Counted from the stretch's first letter, positions 25 to 10,746 are shown. The stretch is DNA of 10,949 bases from Selaginella moellendorffii (GCF_000143415.4 NW_003314372.1:1-10949), one strand, 5' to 3'. Notes: generated by a model not told the origin, from the sequence alone. Translations and numbers: made by a program.

Positions 25-1650
25 AACTTTGTTAATCGTATTGTTCAATGGGCTTTGAAGCTTTAGACATATGATTTTAATATTGTTCATCGCCCGGGGA
101 GTTCTATGGCTGATGCTAATGCCCTTTTTGGAGCTCCTCTTCCTTCTTCACTCTCTTCTCATGTTTTTGAAGAGCCTGTTGTTTTAGCATCTGTGGATTT
201 TCTAGATAAAGATTCTGTGCCTAGGGAGTTCTATGGCTGATGCTGATGCCCTTTCTCGAGCTCCTCTTCCTTCTCCACTCTCTTCTCATGTTTTTGACCA
301 GCCTGTTGTTTTAGTATCTGTGGATTTTCTTAATGAGGATTCTGTGCCATCGGTAGTTGTTGTACTTGATGTTCAATGTCCACAAGGCATAGAGCAAGAT
401 CTACCTTCTCTTGATGAGGTTTGCAAGGCTCAAAAGATTGAGCCATGGATTCAAAGGCTTCAAGATGGGTTTAAGAATTTTGTATCACTTACTAATGACT
501 TGCCATTCTGGCATTTGCATTCTCAATATCACCTTGAAGATAGCCTTCTTTATTTTGTGGGGATAGATCCTGATGATCATTTATGGCTGGTGGTGCCTTC
601 CATCTTTATTCCACGGTTTCTTCATACCTACCATGATTCTCCTATCCTAGGCGGGCATATGGGACATCGTCATATGACCAAGAAGCTGTGCAAGTCTTTC
701 TATTAGCTAGAGATGCAACATAATGTTATCCGGTATGTGCATAGCTATGTTTGGTGCCAAGCTCATAATACTCCCCTTCATTCTGCAAAAGGATAGTTAG
801 AGTCAATTGCAGTTTCCTGTCCATTTGAGTTAATGGCATTTAATCTTATAGGACCTTTTCCATGATTAACTACTGACAATGAATATGTTATTATTGCTTC
901 TAACTATTTGACTTGTTGGGTGGAAGTTGGTGCTCTTGCTAGCACCTATGCAATTACTGTTGGATACTTCTTCCTCAATCGAGTGGTGTTCTAGTATTCT
1001 TGTCTAGAGCAAATTCTTTCGGATAATGGTCCCGCATTTATGGCTGAAGCATTTCATGTTTTGACCTCTCGGTTGGGGATATACCACACTTTCATGAGTG
1101 TTTATTATCCATAGTCAGATAGTTTGGTGGAACGGCTCGTTTGGCATTCAAAGAAATGATCGCAAAGTATGTGAACTTTTAGCATTCGGATTGGAATGGT
1201 TATTTGCCATTTCTTCAATATGCATATATCACAAGGGTGCAAAGTTCTATTGGTGCTTCACCATATAAACTTTTATATAGTCATAATCTAATATTACTAA
1301 TGGAAATGGGTTTATCTTTGCGATTGCCACGAGCTATTGATGCTAGGTCGTGGGATCAGTATTTGATGAGCTTTCTTCCACTTATCCAAAAAGAGTTTGT
1401 TGAACACTTAAGCCAGATACAATTGGGACAATAACGGCATTACAACTCCCATCATCATTCACCTGCAGAGTACAAAGTGGATGACTTGGTGTTAGTCTAT
1501 TTTCCATATCTTATGGTACATGATTTATCTAAAGGGCTCCATGCTCAGTGGAAAGGACCATTGTGGCAAGTTGGATCACAAGTTTATAAGGTTGGACATG
1601 ACATCTAGCAAGCCGATCCTCCAGAAATTGTGCGTAGTGGTTGAAACACT
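25..1650 (+). mobile_element. Degenerate Ty3/gypsy LTR-retrotransposon pol remnant (RNase H C-terminus, integrase Zn-finger, integrase core, GPY/F tail)
   Basis: Manual translation gives RIVQWALKL*TYDFNIVHRPG..ADALSR (RNase H end), YHDSPILGGHMG..FY*..YVHSYVWCQ (HHCC-like), PFELMAFNLIGPFP, ILSDNGPAF, YP*SDSLVER, LPFLQYAY..SIGASPYKLLY and QWKGP. Many in-frame stops and frameshifts. Confidence 0.93.
97..350 (+). repeat. Imperfect 127-bp tandem duplication inside the pol remnant
   Basis: gggagttctatggctgatgct...gattctgtgcc occurs at 97-223 and again at 224-350 with scattered substitutions. Confidence 0.9.
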
Positions 1651-3751: not shown

Positions 3752-4717
3752 TTAATACCAAACAAAGTGACACTCTAAGAGCCAGTGGCAGACTTCTCCC
3801 ACACCAAGGTTCATGTGTAGCACTTTGAATGAAATGTGGGATGGGTCAAAGCCTGAGGTGTCCAAGTGACAAACTGCAGGAACCTCCACAAGCTTGCTGC
3901 AAGATTGTGAATATGGTTTCAGTGTCACCATAAGCGAATTGTATGGCACATGTAGAGTGCATATGGAAATGTCATGGGATGACAAGCTAGAGTCCCATCT
4001 GTAGCAACCATAGCCTTTTCTACCACCTCAAATTCCCCTCCACATCGCTCACAGTGTTTATGACATGCTTCAAATCGGGCCTGCTGACTATTGAAGACGC
4101 TTGCTCCAGGATAGTCTTCACGGAGACATGGCACGCCTTGATCTCGTCCTTGATGCTGGCATCCATAGAACACATGCTCAAGCTGTCCCACATTGCCTTT
4201 GATACAGAAGACTGCATCAGGATTTGCATCGTTGGCAGCAGTCGTGAGAAACCATGGTTCCAAGAACTGGCTCAAGGAGTGAATGCATGAACATACTGGG
4301 AGGAATTGAGTTGTCCCAGAGGAGAGGCGGTGGCAGCCGACAAGCATGTTCATCTGGAAGAAAAGCTTGGGGGATCAAATTCCAAGGTTAGATTCCATTG
4401 CACTCCTGGCAAGGTGATGATGCTGGCGGTGATGATCAATGTGGTGGCACACAGGAAGCCGGCTTTTTTTGCACGACTCGAGTGACATGGTGCCGGAAGC
4501 ATGGATTTCCCGCTTGATGCGCATTTTGGAGGCATCATCCAAGGGCGACAGCCTCTCCAGTATTGAGCCAGGAAGGAGACACCCCTGCGTCAAAAACAAA
4601 AGTAAGAGTTGAGAATGAGCGAGAGCTCATGACTAAGAGGCTCTTGAAGCTGACCACATGATGCACGAGAGAAATCGCAAGCAAGATACGTAGCAAAACG
4701 TGACCGCCAATAGACAT
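3752..4717 (-). pseudogene. BURP-domain protein (stand-alone burpitide cyclase-like), secreted; frameshifted as assembled
   Basis: Exon 1 4717-4655 (MSIGGHVLLRILLAISLVHHV, signal-like), 70-bp intron 4654-4585 (GTCAGC...TTTTTGACGCAG), exon 2 4584-3752. Joined frames give LSPLDD..SCKKAGFLC, LPG..LTLEF..SFLPDEHA, AMWDSLSMC..IKDEIKAC, then ACH-PMTFPYALYM-CH..VEVPAVCH-LDTSGFDPSHISFKVLHMNLGVGEV-CH-WLLECHFV-W. This is the CHx10CHx~24CHx25CHx8W BURP signature. About five frame changes are needed (near 4467, 4362, 4350-4270, 4036, 3938). Confidence 0.93.
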
Positions 4718-4845: not shown

Positions 4846-5835
4846 TCAATACTTGAGCATGGACACAAGGATTTTGCGAGTAGGCTCGAGCTTGGAAGTG
4901 GAATGTCTAGAATGGAGCACATGAGAATTTTCCAGCATGAGCACGTCCCCTTGCTCCCACTGCACAGCAAATTGTTTCTCCTGCATGATTTCACAGGCGG
5001 CTTTGATAGCATCCGTGGGCATGGCTGTCTCGTCTCCAAACTCAACATATGGCTCGCTAGAATCACGGACGTAGCTTGATCCAATCGCATTAAACCATGC
5101 CTTCTTGCCGCTTGGAAGCTGCTTGATTGCTGGGCAAGGCCCAAGGTAGAGCTTCACGAGTCCATTCTCAAGCTGCTTTCTCTTGTACCCATTCATATTG
5201 CTGAAGGAAAGAAATCTCATATAACTATCCATTGAAGAAGAATGTGGTGTGGTACCTGCCATATTTTGGTTGCTCCGATGCTGGCACGGTGAAGCAATAT
5301 ATCGCTCCCTTGTCCTCCAAATCTTGAAGAAAGCTAGGGAATTTTTTGGACAAGTCCTCGTAGACATCATCCCCTCTCACAATGCCCGTCGCGCCACCAC
5401 ATCCTTGGGGCGGTGCAACCTCGCAGTAGAAAACAAGCACGTCGGGAATGACGGGCATCTGCAAGGAAAGCTTCACGACTGGCAAATTTCTCTACTGTCC
5501 AAGCTTACATAAGTAATTTCGTTGTGGAAGCCGATTGGAATCTCGAGAGGGAGGTCGTCATTTGCTGTGTAAACCGAGCCTTTGACGTGTTTCCGATCTT
5601 GGCTCCCAAAGTGATCATGCAAGATCTTGTAGTCCAGAGCTTTGATAACTTGATCAAAATCCGCTGCGTCTTTCACCGGAAATCCTCTTAAGAGCAATGC
5701 TCCATTGCGAGCGAGCTTGTCATGGATCCAGGCTTTGTGCTCCTGGACCTTGGATATGAAGTCATCCAGCGGCAACTCTCGTTCGTCTGGATTTGGCACC
5801 ACAACAGCAGGGAACTTACCAAACTGGTCCTCCAT
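4846..5835 (-). CDS. Clavaminate synthase-like / TauD-TfdA family Fe(II)/2-oxoglutarate dioxygenase (At3g21360-like), 3 exons, 294 aa from ATG 5835
   Basis: Exons 5835-5509, 5458-5256 and 5200-4846 splice in frame (885 nt). Introns are 5508-5459 (50 bp, GTAAGC..CCTTGCAG) and 5255-5201 (55 bp, GTACCA..CCTTCAG). Motifs: FPAVV, GALLLRGFPV, VYTAN, IGFHNE (HxE, 5526-5518), FYCEVAP..GG.T, WFN, FGD, WEQGDVLMLEN..VLHSR..R. The true start may be ATG 5894 if one A is missing from the A5 run at 5883-5879. Confidence 0.93.
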
Positions 5836-5861
5836 AAGTGCCGGCGGCGGATGCAAGCGAG

Positions 5862-5881
5862 AAACCCTAACGTTAGGGTTT
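5862..5881. promoter_or_regulatory. Perfect 20-bp palindrome made of two inverted telo-boxes
   Basis: AAACCCTAAC|GTTAGGGTTT. Each arm contains the plant telo-box AAACCCTAA and the centre is AACGTT. Regulatory function is inferred. Confidence 0.6.
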
Positions 5882-6036
5882 TTCCCGTCGCCATGGAGGA
5901 CTAATCGATTGTCAACTCATCAAATTATAATAAAATCATGTCAGAAACCATAAATATCTAGAAAATGTCATCTGAAGCATTCTAGAGCTATATGATTGAT
6001 GCAATACCTTTAAACCTAAAGCCAAGGTAACCAATC

Positions 6037-6046
6037 TATTTATATA
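6037..6046 (-). promoter_or_regulatory. Candidate TATA box for the dioxygenase
   Basis: TATATAAATA on the minus strand about 140 bp upstream of ATG 5894. Confidence 0.35.
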
Positions 6047-6420
6047 TTTTATAATATATGGACTCTGAGTTAGATGCTTTATTTTGTCCACTACTATGTG
6101 AGTTGTTCATATGTCAAGTTGGCACCATGATCCAATGCTAGTTGGTGTGTCATTATTCAACATGTGGTCATTATAGTGTGTCATTATTCATTCTGATACA
6201 GTGGGCCAGGCTCGAAGAAATATTGTCTTTTGATAGAACTTCACGACAAAATTGTTCATTTATCAATGAACAGTTTTCCTCTTTTCCAAAAAGAAAAATA
6301 AAATGAGCTGAATTAGAAGTTTCTTTGTAGTTCAGTAAACATATGCAAACCTAAAGTTGGCCATGAATTGACTTTTCACATGATATTTTACTCTGGTCTT
6401 TGCGCTTTCTGGCACCAACA

Positions 6421-6429
6421 CTATTTAAG
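6421..6429 (+). promoter_or_regulatory. Candidate TATA-like box for the precursor peptide gene
   Basis: CTATTTAAG about 40 bp upstream of ATG 6464, followed by an A/C-rich leader (atacaaaacactcATG). Confidence 0.35.
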
Positions 6430-6463
6430 AAAGTGGCTTCATATTGTAATATACAAAACACTC

Positions 6464-7113
6464 ATGCAATTTCATTTGTTCTAGTGTTGTTCTTCACTGT
6501 AAGTTTTACAGTTGCTCTAGATGCTCTTGACATTGTCTATTTCGTTTTTCAGGCGACTTTAGCTCTCCGAATCGAAATAGATGCTGTTGAACAATCAACA
6601 ACGAACCCAACATCTATTCTGAAGGAGGTTACAGAAACGAAGGCTAAAGAAGAGAACACAACTCCAGAACTCAAGCAATCAATCAATCCCGAAGCCCCGT
6701 TATTCTATGCCAAGCAAGCAGTGAATCCCGAAGCCCCCTTACTCTGTGCCAAGCAAGCAGTGAATCCCGAAAGCCTGTTTTTTTATGCCAAGCCAGCAAT
6801 GAATCCCAAGGTCCCCAAGCAAGCAGTGAATCCCGAAAGCCTGTTTTTTTATGCCAAGCCAGCAATGAATCCCACCCCAAGCAAGCAGTGAATCCCGAAG
6901 CCCCCTTATTCTATGCCAAGCAAGCAGTGAATCCCGAAGCCCCCTTACTCTATGCCAAGCAAGCAGTGAATCCCGAAAGCCTGTTTATCTATGCCAAGCC
7001 AGCACTGAATCCCAAGGTTCCCAAGCAAGCAGTGAATCCCGACAGCAATGAATCCTGAGGTCCCCAAACAAGCACTGAATCCTGAGGTCCTGCTTCTCTA
7101 TGCCAAGCAGTGA
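6464..7113 (+). CDS. Secreted multi-core repeat peptide: putative split burpitide (cyclopeptide alkaloid) precursor; frameshifted as assembled
   Basis: Exon 1 6464-6498 M(A)ISFVLVLFFT (ATG is 1 nt out of frame, ATGCA vs ATGGCA). A 54-bp phase-0 intron 6499-6552 (GTAAGT..TTTTTCAG) follows. Exon 2 gives ATLA-LRIEID.., an acidic leader, then repeats AVNPE-xxxxY-AKQ ending at TGA 7111-7113. It is interrupted by a 4-bp deletion at 6874/5 and an inferred 23-bp deletion at 7042/3. Confidence 0.85.
6673..7110 (+). repeat. Coding tandem repeat with 39-bp core-bearing units and 27-bp coreless units
   Basis: Constant AAGCAAGCAGTGAATCCCGAA flanks variable 15-bp cassettes at 6694, 6733, 6772, 6838, 6900, 6939, 6978 and 7087. 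Unit lengths are multiples of 3. Confidence 0.95.
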
Positions 7114-10100
7114 GTATGAATGTATGTGAAACTGGATTTCTTTTTCGTGTGTGTGTAACCACCAACGTCCTGAAGTTTCAAAATAAAAATGATATTATGA
7201 AATATTTCGAATGGGGTTGAGGCTGTCAACTTTATAAGACCAACTTTAGCAAACTCTAAATCCAGATGTATGATATATTAGTTAATTGTCGACAGTATGT
7301 AAGATGATATTTTTTGGTATCTTTTTGCTAAAGGAATCCCAATGGAAATGAAAATAGCATAACTTAAGCTGAAAGGCATGTAATTAAAGTGTGATGAGTC
7401 AAATAATGATGGAGGTGTGGAAGTATCAGTAATGAATTGTAAAACTTGACAATTATGAAACAACTAAGCAAAAGGTGTAACACAATTGATTGAATTAGTA
7501 AAAGTTAACTACCCAAGACTTTTTATTAGGATAAAAAAGTTAAATATATATCCCACGAGGGGATAAATTGTTTATGTTGTGATATAGTAAGTCAAATGTC
7601 ATAAAGGGAAATGCTCATTTTCAAAGATTTTCATTATTAGGACACCTAAACACTCTAAAACAACAAAAAGTGGTGTTTAGTGTTATAAGGGCATTAAATA
7701 ACGCCCAAGGGACTAAGTCCCTAACGAATAATGGATAAAAAGTGTTATTCAATATTTAAAGTTGCGGAGACAAGAAAAATCCATCTATCTGGACAAAGCC
7801 AAAAAAGATTTTGGCAAGGCTAGTGACAGGTATATAAAGATATGTAAGTAACAATGTTAATCCCAATGTGTGGGATTACAAGGTGAGCATATCCGAATTG
7901 AGGAACCACTTCCAAAGGTATCGCATAGGTTCATCCCTAAGAATACTTATTAAGGCATGATAGAAAGTGCAAAGTTATCCTCTTAGTCTAGAGGAGAATA
8001 ACTGAAAGAAATGTTTAAGACCAAAAACAAGTAGTAAAGGGATAAAATTGAACTATAGTAATCGAAAAATAACCGAGAGTGGTTATGCAAGTTGGGAGTG
8101 AAGAATTAAGTGGGTGCTCGAAAGTGTTGTTATTGTCAACCATAATGCCATGGAAAGTTTAAGATATGGAATTGTTCATGTTAAACTGTATAGCAATTAA
8201 AAAGCTTGCAAAAGGAGAGGCTTTAGGAAATTAAAGGACAGAGTCCCTTCAAAGTTCTCAAAGACAATTTTAGGTAGATTAGTACCTAAAAAGACAAATA
8301 TAAATAGTTCATAGAATGCAAGAAATCAAAGTGGTACAGTAGAAGTGTGGTTATTGAAGCTTGCCATGAGGTGAGGCTATAAGGTTGAGGAAATAGTTTT
8401 TGAGTGTTCAAAGAATGGCTTTGAATGAAACTCAATAGTTAAGGACTTTCATGCTTATGCATGAAACCATGTTACACTAATCAGATGGCTTGCTAAGCGA
8501 GATTAGCAAATCAGGGGAACAAAGACCCTAGTTGAAGGTGTTGACTTCAAAAGGGGTGGCCCATAGGGCCAAGTATAGACAAATCCATGCATGATCATAA
8601 ATTTGTTAAGTGAGAAGATTTGGTAGTTTAGAGGAAGTAAGTTCTTAAGTTGTGATCCATAAACCGTTTTAGGTATAAGTTGGTGCATCAATATAGGGAA
8701 TCATGCCAGGCATCATATGTGATGCCATTCGTAGATGCATATATGGAGGTTAAATTTGAGTCCCAACCCTATAGTGCTTGGGTTCGAGTCTTAAATCAAT
8801 AGGGCATAGTAATGGTTTGGAATATGAGGACACTTATTTTTCGGTGGTCATAGACTTTTAATAAAGAGACTAGTTTGGGCACACCGCCAAACAAGGGATG
8901 CCCCAAAGTTGTGATGCACAGTTAGATTGCTTAATGTGAAAGCTTAGCATATATAACTTAAACACCTTGATGCAAGTGGCACCAAGGACGTGGTGAATGA
9001 GATAGGGACATCTAGTCTTAGTTGTTATGGACCCTTGGTTGAAAGGGCTGGCTTGCGTGCACTGGCAAGTGTGAAGAATGCCCCCGAGGTCATAGTCAAC
9101 AAGTTAAAGGTCTGGAAGACCTAATGCCTATTAGTAAACCTGTTAAGGTGTCAAAGTTAAATCACTAGATTATCTTATGGCTAAACAAGGATAAAGTCCT
9201 TGTGAATTTTCTAGTTCAAAGTGTTGATTTGAACTATTGGTAATCGTATGGCTTGGTCAAAGTGACCAAGTGAGAAAGACACCTAAAGGAACTGAATTGT
9301 AACAATACAATAGTATGGTGAGTCCAAGAAAATAGTCCCTAAGAAAAAGACTTATGGGTAGGTCTCATGAATAGAGCCCAAATGTTAAAGATACCTATTA
9401 TGGGTAAACACCCTCTAGACTTGGCAAAGCAGAGCTTTTGCTATGAAATGAAAAAGATATCTCAAGGATGGAGGTAGTGATTTTATGTTGCATGGTGCAA
9501 CAATCAAAGGATAGGAGCAAAAGATTAGTGGCTGAGATTAGGCCATAGAAATCATTAGAAGGAATCTAAATAGAAAATTTAAGCAATGCTAATGAATTGT
9601 GGGAAAATAAATATGTTTCCAAGGATGAATTCCTAAATGCTCCAATTTGGCGAAGGTAAAAGCTTTAAAATATATGAAGTGGTAAAGTAGCTAAATGATA
9701 GGGCCATGGATAGGCCTAGTATGAGTTATGGATAAGTGGAACTTAGTGCTAACGGTGGCATAAAATGAAAGAGAAGATGATGATGGCCTCTAGTAAAGAA
9801 CTTCCTATAACCGGTGCAATACAAAGTGTCAGACACACATAGGAAATTGACTCGAGATGTCAATATTAAAGCTCTAGAGTGCAATGGTTATGTTAGTAGA
9901 AGCTGAGACTACTCTTGAATGACTAGTAAAATTGAAAACAAGTTTAGCATGAACTAAATAAACAAAAAAAAGGGGGGGAAGGACCACCATCAGTGGTCTA
10001 ATGAGTCTTTAAGTTGGAAAGACTATGCTCTTTAGAGGATAGACAAAGCATAGTGAGCCTTTGGTGTCAAACCATTGATAGATATTGGTTGGGTGCCAAA

Positions 10101-10423: not shown

Positions 10424-10746
10424 GAGATGGAGTCTAAGATGGACCTAAGATGGACCCGAGATGGAGTCTAAGATGGACCCGAGATGGAGTCTGAGATGCA
10501 TCCGAGATGGACCCAAGATGGACCCGAAATGGAGTTCGAGATGGAGCCGGAGATGGACCCGAGATGAAGTCCAAGATGGAGTCTGAGTGGACCTGAGATG
10601 GAGTTTGAGATGGACTTGAGATGGAGTCTAAGATGGACCTGAGATGGAGTCCGAGATGGACTCGAGATGAACCCGTGATAGAGACCGAGACTAGAACTAA
10701 GACCGAGTTTGAGTCCAAGTTTGAGTCCGAGTCCGAGTCCAAATCT
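10424..10746 (+). repeat. Minisatellite of 11/12-bp units (RAGATGGACCY / GAGATGGAGTCY) grading into GAGTCC-like hexamers
   Basis: About 20 units over 10424-10675, then gagacc gagact agaact aagacc gagttt gagtcc aagttt gagtcc gagtcc gagtcc over 10681-10746. Confidence 0.9.

What the first reader, a model, noticed from the sequence alone, without database searches (positions are those of the whole stretch)
6464..7113. Unannotated multi-core precursor encoding a small library of xLxY / xFxY cyclopeptide-alkaloid cores
Seen: a signal peptide, a roughly 35-aa acidic leader, then a constant AKQAVNPE linker with cassettes APLFY (6694), APLLC (6733), SLFFY (6772, 6838), APLFY (6900), APLLY (6939), SLFIY (6978) and VLLLY (7087). 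The residue two before Tyr is always Leu or Phe. Known: 14-membered cyclopeptide alkaloids carry an ether from the Tyr phenol to the beta-carbon of Leu, Phe or Pro at that -2 position. From memory, LLLY and PLFY match the franganine and ceanothine-B skeletons, and selanine cores contain a similar hydrophobic xLxY. Inference: one gene encodes both beta-hydroxyLeu-type and beta-hydroxyPhe-type macrocycles, and NPE / AKQ are recognition or cleavage sequences.
Basis: partly seen in the sequence, partly recalled or inferred. Interest (0 to 1): 0.85.

Follow-up and report, generated by a model that had tools for sequence, protein, structure and literature searches.

The report
Decayed cyclopeptide-precursor gene cluster in Selaginella
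The repeated xLxY/xFxY cassettes are real and lie beside a BURP-domain cyclase gene, as plant cyclopeptide-alkaloid precursors do, but in this clubmoss locus both the precursor and the cyclase are broken by frameshifts, so it is most likely a dead relic and not a working peptide library.

Summary
They do not form one ORF. The ATG at 6464 is one base out of frame and stops after six codons. A 4-nt deletion (~6875) and a 23-nt deletion (~7043) put three cassettes in another frame, and one Tyr is now Cys.

The window is Selaginella DNA, syntenic with S. moellendorffii GL377640.1, which carries the same three frame defects.

A BURP-domain gene (3752-4717, minus) and an intact TauD/clavaminate-synthase-like 2OG oxygenase gene (4846-5835, minus) lie directly upstream. 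This is the "stand-alone precursor + split BURP cyclase" layout known from eudicots (PMC10107690). The BURP gene is also broken: its Pfam profile is spread over three frames, and 71 nt separate CH motifs 2 and 3. The reference copy has different private lesions, and substitutions run 9 nonsynonymous to 3 synonymous.

A search of 1.84 billion proteins found one real homologue, the reference allele XP_024516312.1.

Verdict: a decayed, lineage-specific, split-burpitide-like cassette. The chemical reading is plausible for the ancestor. The "one gene, small library" reading is not supported for this sequence. Interest is moderate.

The parts
6464..7113 (+). Precursor-like gene relic: signal-peptide exon, intron, acidic leader and eight-cassette repeat array. 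Not a continuous ORF.
   Evidence: the homologous reference allele has the same defects
6464..6466 (+). The only ATG at the expected start. It is one base out of frame with the hydrophobic exon (frame 1, stop at 6482-6484). A TATA-like TATTTAAG lies at 6423-6430.
   Evidence: identical in L001
6499..6552 (+). Putative 54-nt intron (GTAAGT...TTTTTCAG). Its length is a multiple of 3, so the unspliced reading also stays open.
   Evidence: spliced out in XP_024516312.1
6553..6693 (+). End of the signal peptide plus an acidic leader, ending in the first linker-like KQSINPE.
6694..6888 (+). Cassettes still in frame with the leader: APLFY, APLLC (TGT 6745-6747; the reference has TAT), SLFFY, SLFFY.
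6870..6891 (+). First internal lesion: a linker 4 nt shorter than its two sister linkers (gap at about 6874/6875), giving the premature TGA at 6889-6891.
   Evidence: shared with L001
6900..6992 (+). Cassettes APLFY, APLLY and SLFIY, readable only in frame 2.
7030..7058 (+). Second internal lesion: a 23-nt gap relative to the sister unit removes one whole core cassette (at about 7042/7043). TGA at 7056-7058.
   Evidence: shared with L001
7078..7113 (+). Last unit NPE-VLLLY-AKQ plus the stop, back in frame 0 (-4 and -23 sum to -27). AATAAA follows at 7182-7187.
3752..4717 (-). BURP-domain gene relic of the short 'split' type, with a signal-peptide exon (4717-4634) and no core repeats. The N-terminal exon model (introns 4633-4585 and 4403-4354) is tentative.
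3785..3984 (-). The four CH motifs: CH1 3984-3979, CH2 3948-3943, CH3 3871-3866, CH4 3790-3785. Spacings are 30 nt, 71 nt (not a multiple of 3, so a frameshift, shared with the reference) and 75 nt.
   Evidence: direct count; profile 120-153 in one frame, 149-215 in another, in both copies
4035..4038 (-). Window-private 1-nt shortening of a G run (4 G here, 5 in the reference), which shifts BURP profile 57-112 and 120-153 into different frames.
4252..4253 (-). Window-private 1-nt shortening (GG here, GGG in the reference), a second frameshift inside the BURP domain.
4846..5835 (-). TauD/clavaminate-synthase-like Fe(II)/2OG oxygenase gene. It has three exons (introns 5508-5459 and 5255-5201) and is an intact 294 aa, with H-x-E (FHNE) and a distal His (VLHSR). 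It lies between the two relics.
5836..6463 (.). Divergent spacer between the oxygenase and the precursor relic, AT-rich. It contains the palindromic telo-box pair AAACCCTAACGTTAGGGTTT at 5862-5881.

Best explanation
The locus is the decayed remnant of a small Selaginella gene cluster of the split-burpitide type. In its working state (inferred), the plus-strand gene encoded a secreted precursor: a signal peptide, an acidic leader of about 40 aa, and about nine short cores ([A]PLFY, [A]PLLY, SLFFY, SLFIY, VLLLY) separated by conserved ...AK(Q/P)A..NPE linkers. The neighbouring copper-dependent BURP-domain cyclase would have joined the phenol oxygen of the terminal Tyr to the beta-carbon of the Leu or Phe two residues upstream (or of the Leu three upstream in the SLFxY cores). 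Proteases would then have released the cyclic tetra- or pentapeptides. The TauD-like 2OG oxygenase between the two genes may have been a tailoring enzyme (speculative). In the sequence as it stands (shown), the precursor has lost its reading frame at the start codon and at two internal deletions. One core in each known copy has lost its Tyr. The BURP gene carries one frameshift shared by both known copies plus different private lesions in each. The cassette was therefore already non-functional in the common ancestor of the two copies and has kept decaying.
For: Array and coordinates. Frame defects in the precursor. The same three defects occur in the independent S. moellendorffii copy, together with private core damage in each copy (Y->C here; a 2+1-nt loss destroying the third core there). 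The BURP neighbour has its Pfam BURP profile segments 57-112, 120-153 and 149-215 in three different frames of the window, whereas the reference copy holds 46-153 in one frame and 149-215 in another. There are 71 nt between CH2 and CH3. The reference has private lesions: TGG->TGA, a 5-nt deletion, and D->H in CHLDTS. BURP substitutions between the copies are 9 nonsynonymous (one a nonsense) to 3 synonymous, about the neutral ratio. Precursor plus split BURP cassettes and xLxY Tyr-O-Leu chemistry are established (PMC10107690; PMC12871766; PMC11253845). Only six BURP genes are reported in S. moellendorffii (PMC9121072), so a BURP gene within 2 kb of a Tyr-terminated hydrophobic repeat array is unlikely to be chance (inference). 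No other homologue was found among 5.8 and 1.84 billion proteins.
Against: NCBI's pipeline does predict a 146-aa protein from the reference allele, so a transcript may exist; I could not inspect RNA-seq. Substitution divergence between the two copies is lower in the three genes (1.1-1.5%) than in the spacers (3.9-10%). That is unexpected for long-dead genes, although the 128-bp non-coding BURP-TauD spacer shows 0 changes and the N:S ratios look neutral. There is no outgroup, so the 'ancestral' start and frame are inferred from internal logic only. The exon structure of the BURP N-terminus is ambiguous. No product chemistry is known for this species from the literature I could search.
Confidence: 0.7

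Rival explanations
1. The gene is still a working but shortened precursor. It would be translated from an upstream or non-AUG start (as in the NCBI model) up to the stop at 6891, giving three or four cores that a BURP cyclase encoded elsewhere in the genome cyclises in trans.
For: The reference allele has a Gnomon protein model ending at the same stop. In jujube, ZjuBURP acts on a precursor encoded on another chromosome (PMC12871766). The leader and first linkers are well conserved between the copies (3 substitutions in 221 nt).
Against: The borrowed exon lies antisense in the 5' end of the oxygenase gene, with a weak GTCGCC donor and an intron of about 540 nt in a genome whose neighbouring introns are 49-55 nt. 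Within the still-open part each copy has lost a different core (APLLC here; SLFF-MQDS in the reference). Two of the three leader substitutions are nonsynonymous. No transcript-derived homologue was found in the protein collections.
Confidence: 0.12
2. The array was never a separate gene. It is the detached N-terminal core-repeat domain of a formerly fused, SkrBURP-like autocatalytic BURP gene, separated from its BURP domain by inversion and insertion of the oxygenase gene.
For: The only characterised Selaginella pathway is fused (SkrBURP, cores VLFYPSY/ILLYPSY/FLLYPY). The short 8-aa linkers and the lack of a Phe(-7) recognition element resemble fused systems more than split ones.
Against: Both genes have their own signal-peptide exon followed by an intron, and the precursor has its own TATA-like box, stop and AATAAA. 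HMMER with the leader and repeats found no fused BURP protein. The two genes are on opposite strands with a complete gene between them.
Confidence: 0.08
3. The array is not a RiPP precursor. It is the remnant of a repetitive secreted structural (cell-wall-type) protein that happens to lie near a BURP gene.
For: There is no Pfam or database family match for the repeat protein. BURP proteins are often cell-wall associated, and many Tyr-containing repeat proteins next to BURPs have no known small-molecule product (PMC10107690).
Against: The variable blocks are four to five hydrophobic residues ending in an invariant Tyr with Leu/Phe at -2, set between near-invariant linkers. This is exactly the multi-core RiPP pattern, and it matches the xLxY specificity shown for a Selaginella cyclase.
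Confidence: 0.05
4. The frame defects are sequencing or assembly errors and the locus is intact in the plant.
For: Several differences are homopolymer-length changes (GG/GGG, GGGG/GGGGG, ATG-G/CA).
Against: The start offset, the 4-nt and 23-nt deletions and the CH2-CH3 frameshift are identical in two independently assembled copies that differ by 1-5%. The 4- and 23-nt gaps are not homopolymer errors.
Confidence: 0.03

Closest known systems
Split burpitide cassettes of eudicots (stand-alone precursor + split BURP cyclase: ArbA2/ArbB2 of Coffea arabica; Ceanothus americanus and Ziziphus jujuba cyclopeptide-alkaloid precursors)
   Same: A separate gene with a signal peptide, a leader and repeated linker+core units ending in Tyr. 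It is co-localised with a short BURP gene that has no embedded cores. Cores are 4-5 hydrophobic residues, and PLFY, PLLY and LLLY are isobaric after processing with ceanothine B, ceanothine C and frangulanine/adouetine X.
   Different: No sequence homology: no PF10950 hit, no Ax6YWx7PMP motif, no Phe(-7) recognition element, and Asn/His core borders replaced by NPE...AK. The host is a lycophyte, whose BURPs belong to a different subfamily from the dicot-only BNM2 type (PMC6102523). Both genes are broken.
SkrBURP / selanines (fused burpitide pathway of Selaginella kraussiana)
   Same: Same genus. The core rule is the same, xLxY with a Tyr-O to Leu-C-beta 14-membered ring, and the cores are hydrophobic, such as VLFY, ILLY and FLLY.
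   Different: SkrBURP carries its cores in the same polypeptide and they continue as ...PSY for a second ring. Here the cores are in a separate gene and are followed by AK. HMMER found no similarity between this leader/linker and any BURP protein.
Extinct burpitide cyclase of Nicotiana attenuata (PMC12037056)
   Same: A precedent for lineage-specific loss (pseudogenisation) of a BURP-based cyclic-peptide pathway (abstract seen).
   Different: A different peptide class and plant lineage. I did not read the paper beyond its abstract.
ZjuDC, the 2OG-dependent cyclopeptide-alkaloid decarboxylase of jujube
   Same: An Fe(II)/2OG oxygenase associated with a cyclopeptide-alkaloid pathway.
   Different: ZjuDC is compared by its authors with plant dioxygenases such as hyoscyamine 6-beta-hydroxylase, which makes it DOXC-type by my own knowledge. 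It is not clustered with its pathway. The gene here is TauD/clavaminate-synthase-like (PF02668) and has no demonstrated link to peptides.

Membership tests
Stand-alone (split) burpitide precursor peptides | N-terminal signal peptide on an intact ORF | tested here: not met
   A hydrophobic AISFVLVLFFTATLALR is encoded (mean Kyte-Doolittle 2.2), but no ATG is in frame and two internal frameshifts follow.
Stand-alone (split) burpitide precursor peptides | Repeating recognition sequence + core units with a conserved C-terminal Tyr | tested here: met
   Eight units. Seven end in Tyr and one in Cys (Tyr in the reference copy)..
Stand-alone (split) burpitide precursor peptides | Sequence membership: Ax6YWx7PMP motif after the signal peptide, or a PF10950-type profile | tested here: not met
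   No Pfam hit. The motif is absent from the leader. HMMER finds no relatives except the allele.
Stand-alone (split) burpitide precursor peptides | A hydrophobic residue (Phe -7) flanked by charged residues in the recognition sequence | tested here: not met
   The linker AKQAVNPE has no such residue (against PMC12186524).
Stand-alone (split) burpitide precursor peptides | Co-localisation with a BURP-domain gene | tested here: met
   BURP relic at 3752-4717, 1.7 kb from the precursor start, with one gene between them.
Burpitide cyclase (BURP domain, PF03181) | BURP domain with CH-x10-CH-x23-27-CH-x23-26-CH-x8-W | tested here: inconclusive
   All four CH motifs and the x8-W are present, with x10 and x25 spacings. 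CH2-CH3 are 71 nt apart, so the motif exists only across a frameshift. There is a weak match to AhyBURP 8SY2 (E=0.021).
Burpitide cyclase (BURP domain, PF03181) | Intact ORF and catalytic activity | tested here: not met
   At least three frameshifts in the window and a nonsense codon plus a 5-nt deletion in the reference. Activity is not testable here.
Cyclopeptide alkaloids (product class) | Tyr-phenol ether to the beta-carbon of another residue in a released 4-5-residue peptide | not testable with these tools
   Only the predicted masses could be computed.
ZjuDC-type peptide oxidative decarboxylase | Homology to ZjuDC, or demonstrated decarboxylation | not tested
   The ZjuDC sequence is not held. 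The family assignment (PF02668 against a DOXC-like enzyme) is indirect.

The most novel reading that the evidence does not exclude
Lycophytes independently evolved a split burpitide pathway. It would be a three-gene cluster of a sequence-novel multi-core precursor, a short BURP cyclase and a dedicated, fast-evolving TauD/clavaminate-synthase-like oxygenase acting as the tailoring enzyme (for example beta-hydroxylation or C-terminal oxidative decarboxylation). Its cores would be the same as those of Rhamnaceae cyclopeptide alkaloids. This locus would be a recently silenced copy, with living versions in other Selaginella lineages or accessions.
Probability: 0.12. Interest if true: 0.7.

Novelty: new variant of a known kind. 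Interest (0 to 1): 0.42.

Why it matters
Split burpitide cassettes have been described as a eudicot feature, and the one characterised Selaginella pathway is fused. A stand-alone, sequence-unrelated multi-core precursor beside a short BURP gene in a lycophyte would show that the split architecture, and Rhamnaceae-like cores such as PLFY and LLLY, arose more than once. This holds even for a relic. It would also give a dated example of pathway loss. The intact, highly diverged TauD-like oxygenase in the middle of the cluster is a testable candidate for a new tailoring activity. For genome mining, the case is a caution: motif-level reading of raw DNA can assemble a 'library' across frameshifts.

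Tried and rejected
1. I looked for intact relatives of the precursor. A word-indexed search and a full HMMER scan of 1.84 billion representatives returned only the reference allele. P0002-P0005 are unrelated repeat proteins matched through repeat bias.

2. I used the oxygenase as an anchor to find sister cassettes. The nearest paralogues are 36-42% identical. The one context retrieved (L002) holds ordinary genes and no BURP or cassettes. P0010 had no contig on record.

3. I tried to place ZjuDC in a family. No supplementary files are held, so only an indirect inference was possible.

4. PDB sequence searches with BURP pieces gave nothing for the frame-a piece or for the reference 123-aa piece, and a weak AhyBURP match for the C-terminal piece.

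5. I considered a 32-nt intron (3930-3899) as the explanation for the CH2-CH3 frame change and rejected it. It would leave only 13 residues between the CH motifs, and the region matches the BURP profile as coding sequence.

6. I first suspected that the second oxygenase intron hides a stop codon. It has canonical GT..AG ends and a pyrimidine tract, and the profile is continuous across intron 1, so I treat the gene as intact.

7. Rfam and tRNA scans of the window found nothing.

8. A full-length BURP homologue search was not possible. The pieces are too short for the length window of the word-indexed search, and references that read through stops are not accepted.

Full report
**1. What is in the sequence**

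The region 6464-7113 contains a real tandem array. Tandem Repeats Finder reports periods of 39 and 66 nt, both multiples of three, and a higher-order period of 206 nt at 94% identity.

- APLFY at 6694
- APLLC at 6733
- SLFFY at 6772 and 6838
- APLFY at 6900
- APLLY at 6939
- SLFIY at 6978
- VLLLY at 7087

The residue two before the terminal Tyr/Cys is always Leu or Phe. The leader is acidic, and an AATAAA signal follows the final stop.

**2. What is not there**

The cassettes do not lie in one reading frame.

- The ATG at 6464 is in frame 1 and reads MQFHLF-stop.
No in-frame ATG lies upstream.
- After a plausible 54-nt intron (6499-6552, GTAAGT..TTTTTCAG), frame 0 carries the leader and four cassettes and then stops at 6889-6891.
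- Aligning sister linkers shows the cause: the linker at about 6875 is 4 nt shorter than its two paralogous linkers.
- The next three cassettes are readable only in frame 2, which stops at 7056-7058.
- There a 23-nt gap relative to the sister unit has removed a whole core.
- The last unit (VLLLY-AKQ-stop) is back in frame 0, because -4 and -23 sum to -27.
- The second core ends in Cys (TGT) instead of Tyr.

**3. Where it comes from, and the second copy**

The leader-plus-repeat piece has one real database relative: XP_024516312.1, 'uncharacterized protein LOC112341075' of Selaginella moellendorffii. Its locus is GL377640.1, fetched as L001. It is collinear with the window over BURP, oxygenase and precursor. 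Substitution divergence is 1.1-1.5% in the genes and 4-10% in the spacers.

The window is therefore a second copy of the same locus, either the other haplotype or a very close accession. That copy has the same out-of-frame ATG, the same 4-nt and 23-nt gaps and the same premature stops.

The NCBI model obtains a start codon only by borrowing an exon that lies antisense in the 5' end of the neighbouring oxygenase gene. It ends at the first premature stop.

Each copy also has private damage inside the still-open part. Here it is Tyr->Cys in core 2. In the reference, small deletions turn core 3 into SLFFMQDS.

**4. The neighbours**

*(a) A BURP-domain gene at 3752-4717.*

- It has a signal-peptide exon and no Tyr-containing repeats, so it is the short 'split' type.
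- Its four CH motifs are at 3984-3979, 3948-3943, 3871-3866 and 3790-3785.
- The spacings are 30 nt (x10), 71 nt and 75 nt (x25), followed by x8-W.
- Seventy-one is not a multiple of three. Accordingly, BURP profile positions 120-153 and 149-215 fall in different frames in both copies.
- The window also has two private one-base shortenings of G runs (4252-4253 and 4035-4038). These put profile 57-112 in a third frame, whereas the reference holds 46-153 in one frame.
- The reference has its own private lesions: TGG->TGA, a 5-nt deletion at window 4399-4403, and D->H in the conserved CHLDTS.
- The twelve coding substitutions between the copies are 9 nonsynonymous to 3 synonymous, which is the neutral expectation.
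- The exon structure of the N-terminal third is ambiguous. One reading uses canonical 49- and 50-nt introns. Another frame shows a YW...MPP string reminiscent of the conserved N-terminal BURP motif. I therefore treat only the domain from about profile 46 onward as secure.

*(b) A TauD/clavaminate-synthase-like Fe(II)/2OG oxygenase gene at 4846-5835.*

- It has two canonical introns of 50 and 55 nt and an intact 294-codon reading frame.
- It keeps the H-x-E and distal His residues.
- It differs at 7 residues from SELMODRAFT_425605.
- It is a strongly diverged paralogue, only 36-42% identical to the other S. moellendorffii family members.

**5. Interpretation**

A stand-alone multi-core precursor beside a short BURP gene is the 'split burpitide' cassette established in Coffea, Ceanothus, Ziziphus and Hibiscus (PMC10107690). 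In those plants the copper-dependent BURP cyclase makes the Tyr-O to C-beta ether of cyclopeptide alkaloids.

In the genus Selaginella the fused cyclase SkrBURP makes exactly this link on xLxY cores (PMC12871766 and PMC11253845).

Only six BURP genes are reported for S. moellendorffii (PMC9121072), so chance adjacency is improbable (inference).

- [A]PLFY, [A]PLLY and VLLLY fit 14-membered Leu-linked rings.
- SLFFY and SLFIY could give Phe-linked 14-membered rings. Alternatively, by analogy with the FLWGY core of arabipeptin, they could give Leu-linked 17-membered rings.
- The computed masses of processed PLFY, PLLY and LLLY equal the published m/z of ceanothine B, ceanothine C and frangulanine/adouetine X. 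This is agreement in composition only.

The sequence as it stands cannot express that library. The start is out of frame, half the cassettes are out of reach, cores are eroding, and the cognate cyclase is frameshifted. The shared lesions show the cassette was already dead before the two copies diverged, and the private lesions show continued decay. Loss of burpitide pathways has a precedent in Nicotiana (PMC12037056, abstract).

**6. Relation to known families**

Functionally and architecturally this works like, or once worked like, a split burpitide cassette. It is not a member of the known precursor family by sequence:

- no PF10950 match
- no Ax6YWx7PMP motif
- no Phe(-7) recognition element
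- core borders of NPE...AK instead of Asn...His

Lycophyte BURPs are also a different subfamily from the dicot-only BNM2 type that supplies the known split cyclases (PMC6102523).

The oxygenase is not of the ZjuDC kind as far as can be judged. ZjuDC is compared by its authors with hyoscyamine 6-beta-hydroxylase-like enzymes and is unclustered. Any role for the oxygenase in this cassette is speculation.

**7. Caveats**

- I could not look at RNA-seq, so expression is unknown.
- The lower divergence of the genes relative to the spacers is not fully explained. The non-coding 128-bp BURP-oxygenase spacer is also unchanged, and N:S ratios are near neutral. This points to regional rate variation or alignment difficulty in AT-rich spacers, not to selection.
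- There is no outgroup sequence, and no tool here can scan other plant genomes by DNA.

**8. Verdict**

- Observation: partly confirmed.
- Interpretation: partly supported.
- Best explanation (confidence about 0.7): a decayed, lineage-specific split-burpitide-like cluster.
- Novelty: a new variant of a known kind.
- Interest is moderate. It lies in the evolutionary point, a split-type cassette with Rhamnaceae-like cores in a lycophyte, and in the clustered TauD-like oxygenase as a lead. The locus is not a working peptide library.

Noticed in passing
window 4846-5835 (-): An intact TauD/clavaminate-synthase-like 2OG oxygenase gene (294 aa, introns of 50 and 55 nt) lies between the BURP and precursor relics. 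It is only 36-42% identical to its nearest S. moellendorffii paralogues, so it is a fast-evolving lineage-specific copy. Between the two locus copies it shows 7 nonsynonymous and 3 synonymous changes and no indels.
   Followed up: partly
window 5862-5881: A palindromic pair of telo-box-like elements (AAACCCTAACGTTAGGGTTT) lies in the divergent spacer and 5' end of the oxygenase gene. The NCBI model of the reference precursor allele takes its ATG from just beside it, on the antisense strand.
   Followed up: no
window 97-706 (+) and 1204-1434 (+): A retrotransposon integrase fragment (Integrase_H2C2 match, below the Pfam cut-off) with a 127-nt tandem duplication at 97-348. The flanks of the locus are only about 89% identical to the reference copy.
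   Followed up: partly
window 10424-10742: A satellite-like tandem repeat array (periods 23, 57 and 80 nt, 74-77% matches) that creates long spurious ORFs on both strands.
   Followed up: no
L001 11699-17650 against window 7494-7647: The reference copy carries about 6 kb of extra sequence downstream of the precursor relic that the window lacks. This is probably a transposon insertion or deletion polymorphism.
   Followed up: no
P0004 / L004 10001-11965 (ENA ERZ25073846 contig): The HMMER search picked up an unrelated 654-aa eukaryotic protein with a signal peptide and many repeats of EQHSFHFY(Q/D)KAAKQDD. The motif (aromatic-x-Tyr followed by KAAKQ) superficially resembles the SLFFYAKQA units. 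Its neighbours include IFT54/MIP-T3 fragments and no BURP gene.
   Followed up: partly
window 6694-7101 (cores): After cyclisation, oxidative decarboxylation and N-methylation, the tetrapeptides PLFY, PLLY, LFIY, LFFY and LLLY have the same calculated m/z as the published ceanothine B, C, A, E/CAM555 and frangulanine/adouetine X of Ceanothus americanus. The match is in composition only.
   Followed up: partly
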